Below, piece by piece: positions 13,726 through 52,272 of a stretch of 64,000 nt of DNA. Both the position numbers and the translations under genes were made by a program. The DNA is taken from positions 1 through 64,000 of IMG/VR virus record IMGVR_UViG_3300026512_000002, one strand, 5' to 3'. Position 1 is the stretch's first letter. Every line of letters begins with the position of its first letter. Under the pieces are notes generated by a model. It searched no databases and was not told the origin of the DNA. It saw nothing but the letters and a program-made list of their open reading frames with translations.

Positions 13726-13765
13726 AATCGTAATATTGATGATCATAAATATATATTATAATAAT

Positions 13766-14112
13766 AAGTTATTTAATAATGAATCGTGCATTGGCAAGTG
13801 TTTCCGGCGGTTCATAGCATAGAATGCTACTTATAGGAAACAACACACATTTGTGTGTTCCATTGTAAAGTTGTAGCTCTGGTAGGAAGGAGCAGTGAGC
13901 GGACATTGTGTGTCGAAACATGTCGCGGCTCTTGGTAGAAATACCAGCGGTAATCAATCCGTCAGAACACGTAAACATGGCTGACTACCATGATTGCTGG
14001 AGTTGCTATCCTAAAAGCAACTCTTGAGTAAATATATACAACCCTATCTGCGTTTGCGATAGGGTTGTATATCATTAAGAAAAGAGGTTGATCCCCTCTT
14101 TTCTTTTTTTTT
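13766..14112 (+). ncRNA. Putative structured early ncRNA (~350 nt)
   Basis: TATATTAT at 13752; GC-enriched; helices include a perfect 15-bp stem 14034-14048/14058-14072; terminator AAGAAAAGAGG/CCTCTTTTCTT plus T-tract. Confidence 0.65.
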
Positions 14113-14219
14113 GATTATGGACGACATATGTTGAAATCATTTTCAATTATATATTATAGTAATAGTTAATGTGTTTATCATACAATATGGTATGATATAA
14201 TATTTATATTGGAGGAAAT

Positions 14220-44056: not shown

Positions 44057-47000
44057 TTATACATAATATGTTATGTTCACATCAATGGTATCAAATATTT
44101 CACCATCTAAACGCAAACCATTCCATGTTACTCTAGTATTATCACCACTATCTATTTCGTAATCAACACCATTGATTTGACTAGGAGCGCCTTCCACTTC
44201 AAATGATTTTATTTTTTTAATAGGTTCTCCGACACCAATATACTTGTTAGCGATGTCTGTAGACGTTAAAGTTGTAGAGTATACTTTTTCTACAATACTA
44301 TGTAGTCGACCAGTATCAGTATCCACTATAACTTTAGCATTATTGTTTGGTAAACTATTTGTTGTTTTAAGAGCATTTATAATCATACCGTTTGTATCTA
44401 TAATAGCTTCGGTGATTATTGATCCATATGAATCACCCACAATAAAAGTTAACTGTTTAGTATTATCAACAGTACCTATTAAAATATTTTGATCGGTCAA
44501 TAATGCACCGTTTCCAGCTAATTCAGATATATAGAAATTATCACTATATATTCCAAAATATACATTGTCCTTATAAGCTATTGTTGATTTGTGTAATTCT
44601 ATAACACTGCCAGCACTATTACCAGTATTAGTATTTTGCATTGTTAACCAAGTATATCCATTATGGTTATTTATGATTTCAATACCTTCAACACTGTTAT
44701 TTATCGGAGTCAACCTATCTCCATTGGTAAACTGCCATTGGATATTAGCCATTGAATATGTTTGAACAACATTTAAATCATCTACATTGACAACATCGTT
44801 TACATTATTATTGCTAATCATCCAACTTGTATTAGTATTAGACGACCCTTCCAGTACTTCAAAAGTGACACCAGCAGATTTATAACCAACAGGCATATCA
44901 GCTGTTCTTACCCAGTTACCAGAATCGTTTACAGTGTAAAAACCATCTTCACTTGTAGTTGTTTGAGCAAAAACACCAACTCTATCTCCATCTGTAGTCG
45001 TCACACCATCTATAGTTCGATTCCCATTTAATGTAACATTATTTGTTATATCAATTAATCTGATTGGTTTTTTAGTTAATTGATTTAAATCAGAATATGC
45101 TCTTGTGATTAATTCCTTATGTGCATCACTCATAGGAGTATTTGAACTATCAATACTTTTATTATCATCATCTATTATATGGTCAATCTCTTTTATTTTA
45201 ATAATATCTTTAACAGGATATTTATTTAATTTTACAAGCTCAAACCATGGGCTGTCAGCAATAGGGAGAGTGTTACTCTGGACAAGAATACGAAAACCAG
45301 CAAATTGATATCCACGACCTTTTGGGAACAAATATCTATATAAATAACTTCCATCGGGCAACAATGTAGTTTCTTCAGGTCCCATATATGCGCCGTTATG
45401 ACCATATACACATAGACATGTTTGTGTTATACTAGGATCCATGTTTGTTATCAAGTAACCATTCCAGTTCGTAGGATTGTCATTATAATCTGTGCCACGT
45501 AAAACATCTTTGTTATATGTTTCACAGTAACCACTACCATCATCAGCAAGATTTAAAGATATACGACCATTGACAAGTGTTGCAGGCGAAGTACTTGTAT
45601 CAAATGTAAAACCAGTAGTTGCTATATCATGTTTCCATGCGTCATTGACTAATAAGTTATAATCATTTTCAGTAGATCTATAGATCATGCTATTTGAAAT
45701 GGCTTCGATTGTCACATTGTCTACATTATTTTTTGTTACATCTACATATTGTCTAGTAACGAGTTCTTTATATGATACTTCATCATTTGCATTAGTAATG
45801 AAACTATCTATACTGAATTTATCAGCACCAATGATTTTATCAATACTAACTATTGATATCTCGCTTCCAGTAGTAGGATACGCACCTTTTTTAATGAATT
45901 GTAGGAATGTTGCTTGGGGTGGAGCTGATTCAAGTCTCATATCTGCAAATCTAAAATCACCATATGTTACTGTAAATTTATGCAAATATCTACCTTTTTC
46001 TAAAACAGATGTTGCATAAATAGTTCTAGGGTTTGAATATGCTACTGATTCCATTATTTTTAAATTATATGGAACTAAATCATAATTACTATATAGGTAG
46101 TATGTTCCGTTTCCTAATATAGGGGTATTGTTATTCGTAGGAGGAGGAGAAACAGGATCAGTATGAATGGAAAAATATGTGGTTTGATTTCTAGGAGCGA
46201 ATAAAACACCATTACTTGCACTTGTTCCCGTGTTCAACCCAACATAATTGGAAAATGTTGTATCAATGTACCATGTCTCTAACAGGATGTTTTTTATATA
46301 ATCATTGGTAGACACATCTGCTTTAGCATCAACATATTCTATTGTATCATAGTCTACTTTAGTAGGATCTAATTGTACTACAGTTTCTTGAATTATAGTC
46401 CAACCACCTATATTAGAATACCTGATTCTTAATATACCGTAGTTAGTATCAATTATAGTGCTTATATCACCATTTAATGTGTTAACCACACCACTACCAG
46501 GTGAAGTAGAGACAGTAACAGTAATATTATTTATTGCAGCATTTCCTTTAATGTCTATAAATGTGTATTCTAGAGCATCATATGGTTCTGGTGGTAGTTC
46601 CAATGATATAACATTAGAAGAAGTGTCACATTCCACATTTAGGTTTAGAGGAGGTACTATAAAACCACTGTTATGACTTATTGTATTATTATTAATCACC
46701 ATTCCTGAAAAGGCATCTTCTACCATCGTACCTTTTATATCACTATTTGTCACAACAGGAAAGTATACTTCATTACCAGTACCTTGTGATCCTTCCATGT
46801 GCCCAGACCATTCCACATTCTCAATCGTTATATCTTTAAAATATACATATCTTGTCATATCACTAGATTTGGTATAAAATGATGAATTTATTATTTGAAC
46901 ATTGTCAAACATGATATCGGATACTGACCCTACACCATTCATCTTAAAGCCTTGTAACAATGAACCGTTCTGGATAATACAGTCGTTTAATTGTAAATGA

Positions 47001-48640
47001 GAACCACTAATATTAGCGTTATCGTACATTGCAAATACACTAAAATATCCATTAGTATTCGTAATACGTGTAGAATCATTCATATGAAGATGCCAAATAT
47101 TGGAAACATTGACATTGCTTAATATATTTATTAAAGATCTATCGATTCTTCCTATTTCGCATCCAGTTATACCATTTTTTTGAATAATTGATGTCATCTC
47201 CTTTATATGACTATCTACCAACTGAGAACCTGGTAAAAATATAGAACCTACAACATAATCGATTTTTGTATTTCTAGCATATGTGTTTAGGAAATACACG
47301 CCATCAGCATTATATATTTCAAAATTATTCATGTTTACATTTTCAAATATAATAAATCGACTATTTTTTATCTTTATATTTTTCAAGTCACAACTTCCAC
47401 TCAACATCGTTTTAACAATGTAGTCATTAGTTCTAACATCATGTAAAATTTCTCGATGGGGGTTGCTTGAAGGATAATCTATTCTAGGACTAGACATCGT
47501 AATGCTGTATTTAGTTGGAGAACAGTACCATAAATTATCACTATTATAAAAATCTATTCGAGCGTTATATAAACCGAAAGAATAATTTCTAAAATCAAAA
47601 TCAACATCAATATTATTTCGTAAATCATGTCTTTGTAATATACATCCTTTTCTAAACTCCGGAGAAGCAAACATACCACCTAATTGAACAAAATATCTGT
47701 CAGTGGATAATTTAAAAGTATATCCGTTTAGTAGTGTCAGTATGTTTGTTGTCTGATCCCAAGTAGCATCTACGCCTATTTGTAAATAAGCATATGAACC
47801 ATCATCTCCAACGGTTACATATTGATCGCTCTCTAAAACAGTGTCCTCTCCTAAATATAATTCAGTATCGCTAAGAAAATTTATTGTAAAGTAAGGGGTG
47901 TTGTTAAAATCCCATACATAACCATTACTGAAACCATAGTCGCTATCATATATTGAATTATCACTTCGATACACGTCAACATAGAACCAACCTTCTTTTG
48001 TCATACTTGGTGTATATATGACCAAATCATCAGGATGATCCAAATCAGTTACAGATGCTTCTAACATATTATTACTAATTGCTTGTGCTAATAAGGTGAT
48101 ATCATTAGATTGATGTGTTATACCACTATTTTTTAAAATTTCATTATTTGTTTGAATATCAGATATCTTATAAAGGTTTCCTGGTATCAATGATTGGTTT
48201 CTTATCAATAATCTTAATTCATCATATGTAACATTAATTATAGTTTGACTGGCTGTTATATTGCTCCACTGGCTACCATTGAAAGTATATATTTGGTTTT
48301 CTGCTTTAACATATACTCCCCATCCTTGTTCAGGTGTAGTGAACTCCCATACGTTATCTACTGGGTTCCATGTTCCGATCTCTTGTTCATGACCAGTCCA
48401 ACTTCCAACTGCTCCTGTTGGAATAATATACCTGCCCCAATTCACTAATGTTAGTGTGGCCGGATCTGTTGTATTAACTGTTTCAGCTGGTATTTCCCAA
48501 GTATGCGTGATAGTACGTTTTCTACCATCAGAATATATTACTTGTAAACTATTATCTAAACCTGTTTTAAGTCTTACATAATTCGATTCGGGAGATATAT
48601 TGTTTTTACTAGTTTTAATATCTATAATACTATTTTTCAT
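44057..48640 (-). CDS. Large mosaic tail fibre (DUF2793-like N-terminal module, beta-helix, fibre modules)
   Basis: RYIIPTGAVGSWTG...W.F..P..GW; TIDGVTTTDGDRV...DGFY; late promoter at 48691. Confidence 0.8.
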   Translation of the reverse strand: MKNSIIDIKTSKNNISPESNYVRLKTGLDNSLQVIYSDGRKRTITHTWEIPAETVNTTDPATLTLVNWGRYIIPTGAVGSWTGHEQEIGTWNPVDNVWEFTTPEQGWGVYVKAENQIYTFNGSQWSNITASQTIINVTYDELRLLIRNQSLIPGNLYKISDIQTNNEILKNSGITHQSNDITLLAQAISNNMLEASVTDLDHPDDLVIYTPSMTKEGWFYVDVYRSDNSIYDSDYGFSNGYVWDFNNTPYFTINFLSDTELYLGEDTVLESDQYVTVGDDGSYAYLQIGVDATWDQTTNILTLLNGYTFKLSTDRYFVQLGGMFASPEFRKGCILQRHDLRNNIDVDFDFRNYSFGLYNARIDFYNSDNLWYCSPTKYSITMSSPRIDYPSSNPHREILHDVRTNDYIVKTMLSGSCDLKNIKIKNSRFIIFENVNMNNFEIYNADGVYFLNTYARNTKIDYVVGSIFLPGSQLVDSHIKEMTSIIQKNGITGCEIGRIDRSLINILSNVNVSNIWHLHMNDSTRITNTNGYFSVFAMYDNANISGSHLQLNDCIIQNGSLLQGFKMNGVGSVSDIMFDNVQIINSSFYTKSSDMTRYVYFKDITIENVEWSGHMEGSQGTGNEVYFPVVTNSDIKGTMVEDAFSGMVINNNTISHNSGFIVPPLNLNVECDTSSNVISLELPPEPYDALEYTFIDIKGNAAINNITVTVSTSPGSGVVNTLNGDISTIIDTNYGILRIRYSNIGGWTIIQETVVQLDPTKVDYDTIEYVDAKADVSTNDYIKNILLETWYIDTTFSNYVGLNTGTSASNGVLFAPRNQTTYFSIHTDPVSPPPTNNNTPILGNGTYYLYSNYDLVPYNLKIMESVAYSNPRTIYATSVLEKGRYLHKFTVTYGDFRFADMRLESAPPQATFLQFIKKGAYPTTGSEISIVSIDKIIGADKFSIDSFITNANDEVSYKELVTRQYVDVTKNNVDNVTIEAISNSMIYRSTENDYNLLVNDAWKHDIATTGFTFDTSTSPATLVNGRISLNLADDGSGYCETYNKDVLRGTDYNDNPTNWNGYLITNMDPSITQTCLCVYGHNGAYMGPEETTLLPDGSYLYRYLFPKGRGYQFAGFRILVQSNTLPIADSPWFELVKLNKYPVKDIIKIKEIDHIIDDDNKSIDSSNTPMSDAHKELITRAYSDLNQLTKKPIRLIDITNNVTLNGNRTIDGVTTTDGDRVGVFAQTTTSEDGFYTVNDSGNWVRTADMPVGYKSAGVTFEVLEGSSNTNTSWMISNNNVNDVVNVDDLNVVQTYSMANIQWQFTNGDRLTPINNSVEGIEIINNHNGYTWLTMQNTNTGNSAGSVIELHKSTIAYKDNVYFGIYSDNFYISELAGNGALLTDQNILIGTVDNTKQLTFIVGDSYGSIITEAIIDTNGMIINALKTTNSLPNNNAKVIVDTDTGRLHSIVEKVYSTTLTSTDIANKYIGVGEPIKKIKSFEVEGAPSQINGVDYEIDSGDNTRVTWNGLRLDGEIFDTIDVNITYYV

Positions 48641-48778: not shown

Positions 48779-49570
48779 ATGGGGTTTACTATGGATAACG
48801 AGATATTGCAGTTACAGAAAAATATTAATACTATAAATTTTACAACAACTTTAGTCGAAGACGGTATTGATGGGTACAATACCCAAGAAGCATTAGAAGC
48901 ATATTATACATATTTTAAAAAATTAGATATAGCTGCATTAAGTCGAGTTGTTAAAGATAATCGTAACAGAATAAAATATATAACTCAACGAGGACCATAC
49001 AAATATTCATATAGAATGTGTTCAATTGCTAGTACCTTAATGTTACTCAACTTATATTCTGATGTGGATATGAGTATACCTATATTAGATAACTTAATAG
49101 ACAATGATAATGAATTGATAAAATGGGCTGCAAAATATGGTTTAGAGCATTTTATTAAATCACATAAATTAGAACAGGTTTCAACAGTAATAGCCAAAGT
49201 GTTGACAAAATTAACTCCTAGTGAATATAGTTTCTCACTTAAATATTTATCACGTTCAGAGATTTCAAAATACTTGGAAAATGGTCACCCACTGATAACA
49301 TCTACCAGATTTCCAGGTCGTAAAACAAATAATATGAAATCAGGACACTATATTGTAATAACAGCTGAATTGTTATCTGGGGTATACACTATACAAGATC
49401 CATGGGGTATGTGGGAAAATTATTATAAACATACTGCTGATGTTAATATTAAAGGTAAAGATGTGACTATTTCTGGTGACATATTATTTGGTAAATGGGG
49501 TTCTAAAACGGAATATTCTGATAATGGTGGTTGTTTGAATAAATTTAGAACGATTGGAATTGATTTATAA
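48779..49570 (+). CDS. Peptidase C39-like (papain-fold) protein, endolysin candidate
   Basis: TQ...CSIASTLM (Cys), GHYIVI (His), IQDPWG (Asp); late promoter at 48721. Confidence 0.8.
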   Translation: MGFTMDNEILQLQKNINTINFTTTLVEDGIDGYNTQEALEAYYTYFKKLDIAALSRVVKDNRNRIKYITQRGPYKYSYRMCSIASTLMLLNLYSDVDMSIPILDNLIDNDNELIKWAAKYGLEHFIKSHKLEQVSTVIAKVLTKLTPSEYSFSLKYLSRSEISKYLENGHPLITSTRFPGRKTNNMKSGHYIVITAELLSGVYTIQDPWGMWENYYKHTADVNIKGKDVTISGDILFGKWGSKTEYSDNGGCLNKFRTIGIDL

Positions 49571-49594
49571 TGTTTATTATTTTAAGGAGTATAT

Positions 49595-50095
49595 ATGAAA
49601 GATGAAAGACGTTGTTTTACTAATAAAGAACTTGGAACCATTAAAGCTTTTATGGAAAAATATGAACTATCATGGACCAATTTTGGGGATATTTTAGGTA
49701 TATCACCACAAGTTATTAGTAGGTATGTTAAACTTAAACAACACATCCCAGCCAGTGTTGTAGAACGAATATTTAATAGTATCGAAATATACGACATAAC
49801 TATGTCATATTCTGAACAGGATAATAGTGTGGTTGCCAATAAACAAAGTTATATTATTAGTAATAATATTGCCAAGGAAATTGATGGTTATTTTAAGAAC
49901 CAACTTTATAAAAAAAAGAAAAATCCCTACCAAGATATTGATAACGATTATCCAATCAATAGTGGTTATGATGATATTGACATAATCCTTAAAGATATGT
50001 TTTGTTTAAAAAAGAAAATGTCACATATGATAAAAGAATGTGGTGATAAATATGATAAATTGATAGATTTGTATGAAGGTATATTTGAAAGTTGA
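49595..50095 (+). CDS. XRE-type HTH protein
   Basis: LSWTNFGDILGISPQVISRY...P helix-turn-helix. Confidence 0.7.
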   Translation: MKDERRCFTNKELGTIKAFMEKYELSWTNFGDILGISPQVISRYVKLKQHIPASVVERIFNSIEIYDITMSYSEQDNSVVANKQSYIISNNIAKEIDGYFKNQLYKKKKNPYQDIDNDYPINSGYDDIDIILKDMFCLKKKMSHMIKECGDKYDKLIDLYEGIFES

Positions 50096-50195
50096 TCTGA
50101 TGATTAAAATCAGTATACTTTATTATAACTATATTTATATTCTGTTTCATAAATTAAAATATAATTTAAATACATATTATGTTGGTAACAATCAT

Positions 50196-50606
50196 CTATT
50201 GCGTTTTATAATACTTGGTTGTTTTTGAATTATTACGTTCATTATAGTATTTATTGTAATTTTCAATACTTTTAGAAATAGTTTTGAATTTAGCTAGTAC
50301 ACTTATAATATCAAAACCTATATCAGTAAATCTATCATAATCACACAATATGTATATTTTTTTCAGATCATTGCATTTAACATGGTATTTTTTAGCTATA
50401 CCACATTTCATACTACCTACAATAGTTTTAGTGAGTTCTGTTATTATTTTTTTTTCATCATCAGTTAATTTGGGCAATCTAGTTAAATTAGGTATATCTT
50501 CTTTAAGATATATGTTTTTATAAACAGTTTTTTCAACAATTTTTGGTTTGCAACATGCTGAAGACATTAACAATATACCTGTAATAGTTACGAATATTTT
50601 AAACAT
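50196..50606 (-). CDS. Lipoprotein, o-spanin candidate
   Basis: MFKIFVTITGILLMSSA|C lipobox; start overlaps the stop of the upstream gene (TAATG). Confidence 0.6.
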   Translation of the reverse strand: MFKIFVTITGILLMSSACCKPKIVEKTVYKNIYLKEDIPNLTRLPKLTDDEKKIITELTKTIVGSMKCGIAKKYHVKCNDLKKIYILCDYDRFTDIGFDIISVLAKFKTISKSIENYNKYYNERNNSKTTKYYKTQ

Positions 50607-50959
50607 TAACAATCTCCTTTTTCACAATCTTCTATTCGTTTACTCATAGCTTCTGAAAAACGATATCTAGCTTCAACAACGCTATCGTCACCAGTATCAA
50701 TATTGTCAGATATTGTTCTATTCACAGCAGCAACTTTAGTGTTCTGATGTATTAGAAGTAGTGTTGTTTTAATATTTTCGTTATTAACACTCATTAAGCG
50801 TTTATTTGAATCAACTAATTGTATTATACGGTTTTCTAATTTAGCTATTTCCTTATTTTTTTTCTTATATTTTAAATATAAACGCACTAATCCTAACAGT
50901 GTTATTAATGCAACAATATATTTTCCCCAAGTGTATATTTTTCTTATCATATTAAACAT
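50606..50959 (-). CDS. i-spanin candidate
   Basis: Single N-terminal TM helix, coiled coil, C-terminal Cys; directly upstream of the lipoprotein. Confidence 0.6.
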   Translation of the reverse strand: MFNMIRKIYTWGKYIVALITLLGLVRLYLKYKKKNKEIAKLENRIIQLVDSNKRLMSVNNENIKTTLLLIHQNTKVAAVNRTISDNIDTGDDSVVEARYRFSEAMSKRIEDCEKGDC

Positions 50960-50971
50960 GTTGTCTCCTAT

Positions 50972-51109
50972 TTATCCATTTAAAATAGCTTTATCTGTTT
51001 TTTTGTTTTTCTTATCCTCTTCAGAACATTCTTTAAGATAATCTTCTAATATTAAATTGTTATCGTGTAAAACTTTAATATCTTGGTTATTCTTTTTTTG
51101 ATTACTCAT
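50972..51109 (-). CDS. 45-aa charged protein, absent from the ORF track
   Basis: SD AAGGAG; MSNQKKNNQDIKVLHDNNLILEDYLKECSEEDKKTKKTDKAILNG. Confidence 0.65.
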   Translation of the reverse strand: MSNQKKNNQDIKVLHDNNLILEDYLKECSEEDKKNKKTDKAILNG

Positions 51110-51192
51110 AATATACTCCTTTATGAAATTTATAATATTGTCATTGTTATTGTTAAGTATATAGAATTATTTTAAATATATATTAATTAAAT

Positions 51193-52259
51193 GTTGGATA
51201 TTAGTAATGTTCATAGATTTCTCTATGAAGCATTATCTAGGCGATGTATGCTGCAGAGGGTGAAACCTCTTACGCTATCAATGTCGTTGAACATGATGTG
51301 GATAAGGAATTTATCATAACACAAAGTATCTGACCGTCAAGGAAATGACGTTAACACCCGCTAGGATAGCGTAAAGCCTATGGCTGTAAACGGTAACTGC
51401 CGCAGCAAGTCAGACCTAGTTGGTTATTGGCGTAACATATTCATCGAATATATTTGAATATGTTTATAGTTAGACACACATGAAGTGTGTATTATTGATA
51501 TGAAGACATCCCCATGTTTCCACAAATGGTGAGGTGTGTATACTTGAGATAATATGTATGGAATGGAATATGTTGAGTTATGTTTTGCTTGATATGTTCA
51601 TGTGTTAAACTATGAATATGTTCGTATATAGTATGAATATTGTTATTAGAAGGACAACTATAAACCCGTTCACGGTTGTAACGTGTAATCGTTCTACTTA
51701 TGTTTTGGTAGATACGAAGGTGTGAGAAAAGTAGGATATAAACTACTTCACCAACTCCAGATAATAATGGGGGGACATGCGGTCTTAAAACGTATCGGTT
51801 ATTTCAAATAACCGGGTTGGTAACCTAAAACCTGGCTAGCCGAAGCCAATGTATAAATGAAACTATCATATATTGTGTTATGATAGTGGATTATGGTAGG
51901 ATTGGGCACCCTTGAGTATTTTCGGATACTCTTAATTGTCTATGGTCATAAAAACAGGTCGAACATGCGACATGACCATGATGCTCTAACAAAGCATCAA
52001 GGCGGTTTTCATAACGCCATGTTTTATCCTCAGAAAATCGAGGGGACGGTGGTCCTTAAACATTTGACCAAGTCATTGGTCAAAGTATAAGTGAAGTTGT
52101 TGCTGGCGAGTAATGATTGATCAAATGGCAGGATTGGACATCCTTGAGTATTTTCGGATACTCTTAATTGTCTATGGTATGGGGTGCTAGTCAGGAGTAT
52201 TTGACTAACCATGGTGTTTCGCAAAACATCAAGACAATATGTCGAGCCCCCTTTTTTTT
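51193..52259 (+). ncRNA. Very large structured early ncRNA (~1.07 kb) with a duplicated 54-nt module
   Basis: TATATTAA-N6-G (51179-51193); no convincing ORF; GAAA and UUCG hairpins; repeat 51893-51946 vs 52125-52178; GGGG..CCCC plus T-tract end. Confidence 0.75.
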
Positions 52260-52272
52260 GTATTTACTACTA

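What the first reader, a model, noticed from the sequence alone, without database searches (positions are those of the whole stretch)
51893..52178. Duplicated 54-nt structured module inside the large RNA
Seen: 51893-51946 and 52125-52178 differ at only 3 of 54 positions. The core is GAGUAUU-UUCG-GAUACUC. It is preceded by AGGAU-UGGRC-AYCCU, whose loop can pair with downstream GUCUA (pseudoknot); alternatively GGYA/UGUC closes a three-way junction. The differences convert G-U to A-U, U-G to C-G and A-C to A-U, all compatible with these pairings. Inference: a repeated protein-binding or processing unit, for example a mimic of type III TA antitoxin pseudoknots or of CRISPR-repeat/Racr elements.
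Basis: partly seen in the sequence, partly recalled or inferred. Interest (0 to 1): 0.65.

Follow-up and report, generated by a model that had tools for sequence, protein, structure and literature searches.

The report
Duplicated core in phage RNA
An uncultivated jumbo phage from a hydrothermal vent appears to encode a ~1.07 kb non-coding RNA whose 3' half is an old duplication of a folded domain, and the reported 54-nt repeat is the nearly invariant core of that domain; it matches no known RNA family and its function is unknown.

Summary
The repeat is real: 51893-51946 and 52125-52178 are identical at 51 of 54 positions. It is part of something larger. The duplication spans about 210 nt per copy (51815-52024 and 52047-52249). 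Outside the core the copies are only ~53% identical with many indels. A covariance model built from unit 1 alone still recovers unit 2 end to end, and all 48 modelled pairs in 8 helices form in both units, 12 of them through changes on both sides. So the duplication is old, the fold has been kept, and the core is under extra constraint (or is homogenised by gene conversion). The units form the 3' half of a 1,073-nt ORF-free island that is richer in GC than its surroundings. The island sits in a 227.7 kb AR9-like jumbo phage and folds much better on the + strand. An AR9-type early-promoter motif precedes it and a U8 tract ends it. A significant 31-bp long-range pairing clamps the two units into one domain. 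The type III antitoxin and CRISPR-repeat-mimic ideas fail their architectural tests. The peptide, DNA-operator and intron readings are weak. No homologue was found anywhere and no RNA data exist. Best reading: two equivalent recognition sites in a new large structured phage RNA.

The parts
51174..51186 (+). AR9-type early-promoter-like motif AAATATATATTAA, followed by 6 nt and then G51193 as the predicted start
   Evidence: 12 of 13 match to the AR9 early consensus AAATATATATTAT-(6N)-G+1 (PMC5312081; AR9 annotated promoters). The motif occurs 17 times in this genome against 9.2 +/- 2.9 expected, and 9 of the 17 lie in the ~9.5% of the genome that is ORF-free. Its use as a promoter is inferred, not shown.
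51193..52260 (+). Predicted ~1,068-nt non-coding RNA (the 'large RNA')
   Evidence: Largest ORF-free gap in the genome and the one with the highest GC; the island is 37.9% GC against 27.9% for the genome. The + strand folds at -325.8 against -271.3 kcal/mol for the - strand, and window z-scores are -2 to -4 against about 0 in the flanks. No Rfam family matches, even at E<10. Expression could not be tested.
51201..51407 (+). 5' hairpin and GC-rich multi-branch 5' domain
   Evidence: High-probability helices in the partition function, for example 9 bp 51271-51279/51365-51373 at P 0.96. Thermodynamic prediction only.
51432..51646 (+). Long AU-rich, G.U-rich rod-like hairpin
   Evidence: Stacked helices of 6, 7, 5, 17, 6, 12 and 13 bp with P 0.79-1.00. 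This stretch is far less stable on the - strand: -47.0 against -31.8 and -43.7 against -21.2 kcal/mol in its two windows.
51815..52024 (+). Unit 1 of the duplicated domain (modelled part; a G-run at 51769 may begin it)
   Evidence: Source of models R1 and R2; 8 helices, 48 pairs.
52047..52249 (+). Unit 2 of the duplicated domain
   Evidence: Recovered over the full model length by a model built from unit 1 alone: 66.3 bits for R1 and 83.8 bits for R2, E about 1e-23. All pairs are kept, 12 with changes on both sides and 6 on one side; slid controls pair 27-47% of cells with 0-1 double changes.
51893..51946 (+). Core module, copy 1
   Evidence: Fold: 6-bp stem, 5x5 internal loop, 7-bp UUCG-capped hairpin.
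52125..52178 (+). Core module, copy 2
   Evidence: 51 of 54 identical to copy 1, against 53% identity in the rest of the unit. P(at least 51 of 54 at flank identity) = 2.7e-11.
51851..51861 (+). Minor conserved single-stranded block GUAUAARUGAA (second copy at 52085-52095)
51990..52001 (+). Minor conserved block CAAARCAUCAAG (second copy at 52222-52233)
51769..51838 (+). 5' strand of the long-range clamp
   Evidence: Pairs with 52188-52251 in five collinear helices (31 bp, 3 of them G.U), P 0.76-0.94. Duplex -51.4 against -30.3 +/- 5.0 kcal/mol in shuffles, z -4.2, 0 of 200. The three other edge combinations are not significant. The clamp competes with some local helices.
52188..52251 (+). 3' strand of the long-range clamp
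52253..52260 (+). U8 tract at the end of the RNA, directly after the C-rich closing strand
   Evidence: Read from the sequence. The simple terminator scan did not call it, because the closing stem is long-range. A terminator function is inferred.

Best explanation
The 54-nt repeat is the nearly invariant core of an anciently duplicated, ~210-nt structured domain. The two copies make up the 3' half of a ~1,070-nt non-coding RNA encoded on the + strand of an uncultivated AR9-like jumbo phage.

The RNA is probably made early in infection from an AR9-type early promoter and ends at a U8 tract. Each core folds as a 6-bp stem, a symmetric 5x5 pyrimidine-rich internal loop and a 7-bp UUCG-capped hairpin. 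A long-range clamp ties unit 1's 5' edge to unit 2's 3' edge, so both cores are displayed in one closed ~480-nt domain.

The helices around the core have drifted and been repaired by compensatory changes, while the core itself, loops included, has stayed the same. The core is therefore most likely read by sequence. I propose two equivalent recognition sites, either for a dimeric or multivalent protein of phage or host, or for RNA-RNA contacts that build a higher-order assembly.

**Shown:** the repeat, its extent, helix preservation, strand asymmetry, and absence of any known family.
**Inferred:** transcription, early timing, the clamp, and the binding function.
For: - Repeat and its significance.
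- The duplication is larger than 54 nt, and a model built from unit 1 alone finds unit 2 end to end.
- All 48 pairs in 8 helices form in both units (95 of 95 comparable cells), 12 with changes on both sides; slid controls pair 27-47% of cells.
- Core 94% identical against 53-54% elsewhere in the units, plus 18 gap columns. P = 2.7e-11 for such a block at flank identity.
- Island is ORF-free, GC-enriched and more structured than its flanks; + strand 54 kcal/mol more stable; 3 and 8 G.U pairs in the two units would be A.C on the other strand.
- Promoter-like motif with G at the consensus +1.
- Clamp z = -4.2.
- Both copies are real, and the same phage is seen in a second study.
Against: - No orthologue exists, so all covariation comes from two paralogous copies, on an alignment fitted to the model.
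- No RNA-seq run holds the locus, so transcription is not shown.
- The promoter motif deviates at its last position, and AR9 virion RNAP is reported to be sensitive to deviations.
- The clamp and several local helices are mutually exclusive, so at least one set is not the final fold.
- Gene conversion could keep the core alike without any special function.
- z-scores for the isolated 54-mers are weak: -0.9 and -1.6.
Confidence: 0.55

Rival explanations
1. The island is a structured RNA with an old internal duplication, but the 54-nt identity is the product of short-tract gene conversion between the two copies and marks no special site.
For: The 3' 37 nt of the core are perfectly identical with sharp edges, and all three differences lie in the first 17 nt. 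Only two copies exist, so selection and conversion cannot be separated.
Against: Two further short blocks (GUAUAARUGAA and CAAARCAUCAAG) are also conserved, as separate islands in single-stranded regions. That pattern fits selection better than a single conversion tract. Elsewhere the units differ by many indels, so conversion has not acted generally.
Confidence: 0.15
2. The modules are decoys for a host defence protein: an antitoxin mimic for a type III toxin, or a CRISPR-repeat mimic (Racr) that sequesters a Cas protein. This would be a special case of the protein-binding reading.
For: Phages are known to use both strategies (PMC5086642; PMC10651486). The predicted early expression and the two invariant structured units would suit a decoy.
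Against: - No contiguous tandem array, no toxin gene, and no TA or defence family match in the neighbours.
- No Rfam hit at E<10.
- The hairpin 18-mer gives only 13 single scattered hits in genome contigs and no arrays. The looser pattern gives none in genome contigs.
- The modules are buried about 700 and 930 nt inside a large RNA.
- The host is unknown, so mimicry of an unsampled host repeat cannot be excluded.
Confidence: 0.08
3. The repeat acts at the DNA level: the perfect palindrome GAGTAT-N6-ATACTC is an operator or other binding site for a dimeric DNA-binding protein, present twice 232 bp apart.
For: There is a perfect 6-N6-6 inverted repeat in both copies, and an HTH_3 protein is encoded about 2 kb away at 49595-50095.
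Against: - Conservation covers 54 nt, far more than an 18-bp operator.
- The surrounding 200 nt keep RNA helices through compensatory changes.
- G.U pairs and folding energy are strand-specific.
- The palindrome occurs nowhere else in the genome.
- There is no gene for it to regulate between or after the sites.
Confidence: 0.07
4. The island is a divergent self-splicing or self-cleaving element, related in kind to the many group I and II introns of AR9-like phages.
For: In AR9 the GC-rich ORF-free islands are runs of group I and II introns in the terminase and RNAP genes. Tandem structured units about 250 nt long are seen there.
Against: - The same Rfam search that finds 14 intron matches in AR9 finds nothing here, even at E<10, and nothing in 204 kb of this genome.
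- The flanking genes are on the opposite strand.
- The RNAP ORF is full length compared with its homologues.
Confidence: 0.05
5. The modules encode small hydrophobic peptides: both begin with an in-frame ATG and read M-(V/A)-G-L-(G/D)-(T/I)-LEYFRILLIVYG.
For: ORFs of 65 and 21 codons start at 51893 and 52125.
Against: - Neither has a Shine-Dalgarno sequence, although 75 of 121 long ORFs in this genome have one.
- All three differences are non-synonymous and none is synonymous.
- The reading frames diverge at once after the core, and the unit alignment has indels that are not multiples of three.
- No Pfam-independent support: no PADLOC match.
Confidence: 0.04

Closest known systems
GOLLD and ROOL (large ornate phage and prophage RNAs)
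   Same: Phage-encoded, very large (600 to over 800 nt), densely structured, ORF-free RNAs of unknown function. GOLLD has a conserved 3' region and a variable 5' region, and both assemble through RNA-RNA contacts (PMC12286853). The present RNA is about 1,070 nt, phage-encoded and hairpin-dense, and its conserved elements are also in the 3' half.
   Different: No match to their Rfam models, even at E<10. There are no tRNA genes anywhere in the genome, whereas GOLLD and ROOL often lie near tRNA islands. The internal tandem duplication of a domain is not taken from their descriptions. Oligomerisation is untested.
Type III antitoxin RNAs (ToxI, CptI, TenpI) and phage pseudo-ToxI
   Same: A repeated structured RNA unit that could bind a protein; phages are known to carry mimics (PMC5086642).
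   Different: Those are contiguous tandem arrays of short repeats, followed by a terminator and a toxin gene on the same strand. Here two 54-nt cores lie 232 nt apart inside ~210-nt diverged domains, with a convergent RNAP gene downstream and no toxin.
Racr / solitary CRISPR repeat units
   Same: A phage-encoded non-coding element with a stem-loop that could sequester a protein (PMC10651486).
   Different: Racrs resemble a host CRISPR repeat and sit just downstream of a promoter as small RNAs. No CRISPR array in the sampled genomes carries the hairpin, and the modules lie deep inside a large RNA.
Group I introns of AR9-like jumbo phages
   Same: Same phage lineage, GC-rich ORF-free structured islands, units about 250 nt long that can occur in tandem.
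   Different: No intron model match, not inside a gene, and on the strand opposite to its neighbours.
Tandem-domain RNAs such as tandem glycine riboswitches, or multi-site protein sponges such as CsrB/RsmZ (comparison from general knowledge, not tested here)
   Same: Duplicated structured units that present equivalent binding sites in one RNA.
   Different: There is no downstream gene to regulate; there are only two sites; no GGA-loop pattern typical of CsrA sponges is evident; and no family match exists.

Membership tests
Type III TA antitoxin RNA (ToxI/CptI/TenpI) | Contiguous tandem array of short direct repeats | tested here: not met
   There are two copies only, with starts 232 nt apart and 178 nt of diverged sequence between them. 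The definition is from PMC5086642.
Type III TA antitoxin RNA (ToxI/CptI/TenpI) | Rho-independent terminator and then an endoribonuclease toxin gene downstream on the same strand | tested here: not met
   The downstream gene is a convergent RNAP subunit. No neighbour matches a toxin or TA model in Pfam or PADLOC.
Type III TA antitoxin RNA (ToxI/CptI/TenpI) | Processing by the toxin into pseudoknotted monomers | not testable with these tools
   Needs the toxin and biochemistry.
Racr / solitary CRISPR repeat unit | Sequence and structure similarity to a (host) CRISPR repeat | tested here: inconclusive
   The exact 18-mer hairpin gives 13 single hits in scattered taxa and no locus with more than one copy. 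The looser pattern gives no hit in genome contigs. These tests need near-identity, and the host is unknown.
Racr / solitary CRISPR repeat unit | Small RNA placed just downstream of its own promoter (within about 250 bp) | tested here: not met
   The modules start about 700 and 930 nt after the predicted start at 51193 and are embedded in paired domains. The criterion is from PMC10651486.
GOLLD / ROOL / OLE | Match to the family covariance model | tested here: not met
   No Rfam 15 match at gathering score or at E<10.
GOLLD / ROOL / OLE | Large, ORF-free, densely structured, phage-encoded | tested here: met
GOLLD / ROOL / OLE | Frequent association with tRNA islands | tested here: not met
   ARAGORN finds no tRNA in the window or in the whole genome.
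GOLLD / ROOL / OLE | Homo-oligomeric assembly | not testable with these tools
   Needs native gels, SEC-MALS or cryo-EM.
Group I / II intron | Match to the intron covariance models | tested here: not met
   Nothing here. As a positive control, the same tool finds 14 intron matches in AR9.
Group I / II intron | Interrupts a gene on the same strand | tested here: not met
   The flanking genes are on the - strand and complete.
Structured non-coding RNA (generic) | Base pairs maintained by compensatory change | tested here: met
   Between paralogous units only: 12 double and 6 single changes with 100% of cells paired. Orthologue covariation could not be tested, because no orthologue was found.
Structured non-coding RNA (generic) | Expressed as a discrete transcript | not testable with these tools
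   No RNA run holds the locus. The promoter-like motif and U8 tract are only sequence features.

The most novel reading that the evidence does not exclude
This is the founding member of a new class of RNAs over 1 kb long in jumbo phages. Its 3' half has internal pseudo-twofold symmetry: two clamped copies of one domain, each presenting an invariant stem/internal-loop/UUCG-hairpin. The RNA would be made early by the injected virion RNA polymerase, and would either self-assemble through the cores or capture a dimeric host factor during takeover.
Probability: 0.3. Interest if true: 0.8.

Novelty: new variant of a known kind. Interest (0 to 1): 0.55.

Why it matters
Large (over 500 nt) structured RNAs in bacteria and phages are rare, and those known (GOLLD, ROOL, OLE, raiA) have turned out to have unexpected architectures while their functions remain open. 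A ~1.07 kb candidate in an AR9-like jumbo phage would add an unrelated example from a lineage and habitat not covered so far. Its internal paralogous duplication also acts as a built-in comparative test: it already separates helices that merely need to pair from a core that must keep its sequence. That gives a precise target, the two 54-nt cores, for pull-down, probing and cryo-EM experiments. If the early-promoter reading is right, it would also be a non-coding product of a virion-packaged multisubunit RNA polymerase.

Tried and rejected
**Homologue searches, all negative**
- blastn of the island against phages and plasmids found nothing.
- The exact 18-mer in IMG/VR gave one chance hit, inside the RdRp coding sequence of an RNA virus (L002).
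- Two looser patterns in IMG/VR found nothing.
- The looser pattern in JGI metagenomes found only the window's own contig plus L037. L037 is a eukaryote-like contig with no hairpin between the anchors, so it is a chance hit.
- The looser pattern in GTDB genomes found nothing.
- Models R1 and R3 over the whole records of 26 IMG/VR relatives gave one hit, G009:79563-79755, at 21.6 bits. It lies over coding sequence plus a UUCG terminator and is not reproduced by a direct cmsearch, so I rejected it.

**Synteny and association**
- The nearest RNAP-subunit relatives (44-38% identity) have no island after the gene.
- The divergently transcribed 117-aa neighbour has no homologue.

**Other checks**
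- Weak R2 hits at 14001-14199 amount to one similar AT-rich hairpin. The 14 kb island shows no significant similarity to the large RNA (score 50 against a shuffle mean of 49).
- No RNA runs exist, so expression is untested. Run X2 is the same strain, so it gives no variation.
- The only permissive Rfam hit, snoR09 at E = 5.6, is noise.

Full report
**Observation.** The window holds two 54-nt copies, at 51893-51946 and 52125-52178. They differ at three positions (94% identity) and start 232 nt apart. The central 18-nt hairpin occurs exactly twice in the window against 0.03 expected from shuffles. No piece of the module recurs in the rest of the genome. The duplication is not an assembly artefact. 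In the source run the de Bruijn unitigs break exactly at the shared 37-mer, which has higher depth, and a 255-nt unitig bridges the two copies. A run from a different study contains the same phage, with identical letters across copy 1.

**Context.** The window is the first 64 kb of a 227,696-bp IMG/VR virus record from a hydrothermal-vent metagenome, at 27.9% GC. It is a jumbo phage with split multisubunit RNA polymerase genes. Its nearest cultured kin are the AR9/PBS1 and Staphylococcus S6 type phages, at only about 35% protein identity, and the nearest metagenomic relative is at 44%. The repeat lies in the genome's largest ORF-free gap, which also has the highest GC (50960-52272), between two minus-strand genes. 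The island 51190-52262 is 37.9% GC with G in excess of C. It folds 54 kcal/mol better on the + strand than on the - strand. In 200-nt windows it is more structured than shuffles (z -2 to -4), while the flanking coding DNA is not. No Rfam 15 family matches, at gathering score or at E<10.

**The repeat is the core of a larger, old duplication.** A local self-alignment shows similarity over about 200 nt per copy (score 128, shuffle maximum 49). To test structure without circularity between the copies, I built covariance models from unit 1 alone, using helices taken from its own fold. R1 (140 positions, 34 pairs) recovers unit 2 over the whole model at 66 bits. R2 (210 positions, 48 pairs, 8 helices) recovers 52047-52249 over the whole model at 83.8 bits, E about 1e-23. 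On that alignment all 48 pairs form a standard pair in both units. Twelve pairs have changed on both sides and six on one side. When the 3' partners are slid by 1-3 columns, only 27-47% of cells pair and there are 0-1 double changes. Identity is 51 of 54 in the core. Outside the core it is 54% in paired columns and 53% in unpaired columns, with 18 gap columns. At the flank identity, a block with 51 of 54 identical has probability 2.7e-11. Two smaller conserved blocks, GUAUAARUGAA and CAAARCAUCAAG, also occur once in each unit. The duplication is therefore old, the fold has been maintained in both copies, and the core is under additional constraint. The caveats are that there are only two sequences and that the alignment was fitted to the model.

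**Fold of the core.** The preferred nested fold is a 6-bp stem (UGGRCA with UGUCUA), a symmetric 5x5 internal loop (YCCUU opposite UUAAU) and a 7-bp hairpin capped by UUCG. It scores -11.9 and -13.1 kcal/mol in the two copies, and within the whole units its pair probabilities reach up to 0.87. The three-way junction scores -3.3 and -9.6. Both have near-zero probability in the context of the units. The proposed pseudoknot uses the same pairs as the nested stem but with zero-length linkers, which I judge sterically unlikely from general knowledge. Two sequences cannot settle this.

**A clamp joins the units.** In the global fold, the 5' edge of unit 1 (51769-51838) pairs with the 3' edge of unit 2 (52188-52251) in five collinear helices totalling 31 bp, with probabilities 0.76-0.94. 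The duplex energy is -51.4 kcal/mol against -30.3 +/- 5.0 for dinucleotide shuffles (z -4.2, 0 of 200). The three other edge combinations are not significant. This would close both units into one ~480-nt domain. The clamp competes with one local helix of unit 1 and three of unit 2. So either the RNA switches between forms, or one set of helices reflects the ancestral state. This is unresolved.

**Transcription unit (inferred).** AR9 early promoters have the consensus AAATATATATTAT-(6N)-G+1 and are read by the injected virion RNA polymerase (PMC5312081; annotated sites). The + strand carries AAATATATATTAA at 51174-51186, followed by six bases and G51193. In this genome the motif occurs 17 times against 9.2 +/- 2.9 expected. 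Nine of the 17 lie in the roughly 9.5% of the genome that is ORF-free, and several lie 30-100 nt upstream of same-strand ORFs. The RNA ends in a U8 tract (52253-52260) directly after the C-rich closing strand. The predicted RNA is therefore about 1,068 nt and of the early class. No RNA-seq run holds the locus, so none of this is shown.

**Search for relatives.** Nothing similar was found by the following searches:
- blastn against phages or plasmids;
- pattern scans of IMG/VR, JGI metagenomes and 185,579 species genomes, where all hits were the window's own contig or chance;
- covariance models run over the whole records of 26 related jumbo phages, where the single 21.6-bit hit lies in coding sequence plus a terminator and is not reproduced.

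The nearest relatives have no island at the syntenic position. With no relative closer than 44% protein identity, this absence says little.

**Tests of specific ideas.**
- *Type III antitoxin mimic.* There is no contiguous array, no downstream toxin, no TA or defence match in the neighbours, and no Rfam hit.
- *CRISPR-repeat mimic.* The hairpin 18-mer gives 13 single hits in scattered taxa, about the chance level, and no arrays. The modules are not promoter-proximal small RNAs.
- *Intron.* In AR9 the comparable islands are runs of group I and II introns, found readily by the same tool. Here nothing is found in 204 kb, the neighbouring genes are on the other strand, and the RNAP ORF is complete.
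- *Peptide.* Both cores begin with an in-frame ATG. They lack the Shine-Dalgarno sequences that are common in this genome, all three differences are non-synonymous, and the frames diverge immediately after the core.
- *DNA operator.* The palindrome is perfect, but conservation extends far beyond it, the evidence is strand-specific, and there is no gene for it to regulate.

**Mechanism.** The surrounding helices have drifted while still pairing. The core has kept its sequence in both stems and loops. That is the signature of an element recognised by sequence as well as by shape. Two such elements held in one clamped domain suggest two equivalent sites for a dimeric or multivalent partner, or for RNA-RNA contacts of the kind that assemble GOLLD and ROOL (PMC12286853). 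I put about 0.75 on 'conserved core of a duplicated structured RNA domain' and about 0.4 on the binding-site function, which gives 0.55 for the statement as a whole. Gene conversion is the main alternative explanation for the identity itself.

**Novelty.** The general kind, a large structured phage RNA of unknown function, is known. This one matches no family, lies in a lineage and habitat not yet represented, and has an internal domain duplication that serves as its own comparative evidence. It remains a single-genome candidate without expression data, which limits the score.

Noticed in passing
window 13747-14113 (+): A second non-coding RNA candidate of about 340 nt. It has an exact AR9-type early promoter motif at 13747-13759, a chain of perfect hairpins, and a strong intrinsic terminator (11-bp stem plus a T9 run, 14078-14113). 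It has no Rfam match and no significant similarity to the large RNA.
   Followed up: partly
window 48779-50959: A lysis cassette lies beside the island. It comprises an endolysin-like C39-type peptidase (48779-49570, +), an HTH protein (49595-50095, +), and an overlapping pair on the - strand that looks like spanins. The 117-aa protein has a TM segment plus a coiled coil, and the 138-aa protein has a lipoprotein-type signal (...LLMSSAC). This implies a Gram-negative host for an AR9-like phage, whereas its cultured relatives infect Gram-positive bacteria.
   Followed up: partly
whole genome G000 (for example 14145, 18837, 102682, 112308, 191974): The AR9 early-promoter 13-mer is enriched (17 sites against about 9 expected) and concentrated in intergenic DNA upstream of ORFs. 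This suggests that promoter recognition by the virion RNA polymerase is conserved across about 35% protein identity and across Gram-positive and Gram-negative hosts.
   Followed up: partly
G000 whole genome compared with AR9 (G025): This phage has no tRNA gene and no recognisable group I or II intron in the 204 kb scanned. AR9 carries at least 14 intron matches, including four in a row in the terminase gene.
   Followed up: yes
window 51432-51646 (+): A very long AU-rich, G.U-rich imperfect hairpin (about 66 bp in stacked helices) with recurring AUAUGUU/GAAUAUG words forms the middle of the large RNA. It is far less stable on the opposite strand.
   Followed up: partly
window 52028-52043 (+): A small hairpin, CCUC-N8-GAGG, sits between the two units. 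It uses the C-rich and G-rich strands that could otherwise close unit 1 and unit 2. It might be a switch, or it may simply follow from the base composition.
   Followed up: no
run X2 (a second study, 2025): The same phage strain appears at low depth in an independent data set. Its pieces are identical to the window apart from one T>C at 50962.
   Followed up: partly
window 44057-48640 (-): A giant 1,527-aa protein with a DUF2793 domain and tail-fibre or head-decoration-like segments lies upstream of the lysis cassette.
   Followed up: no
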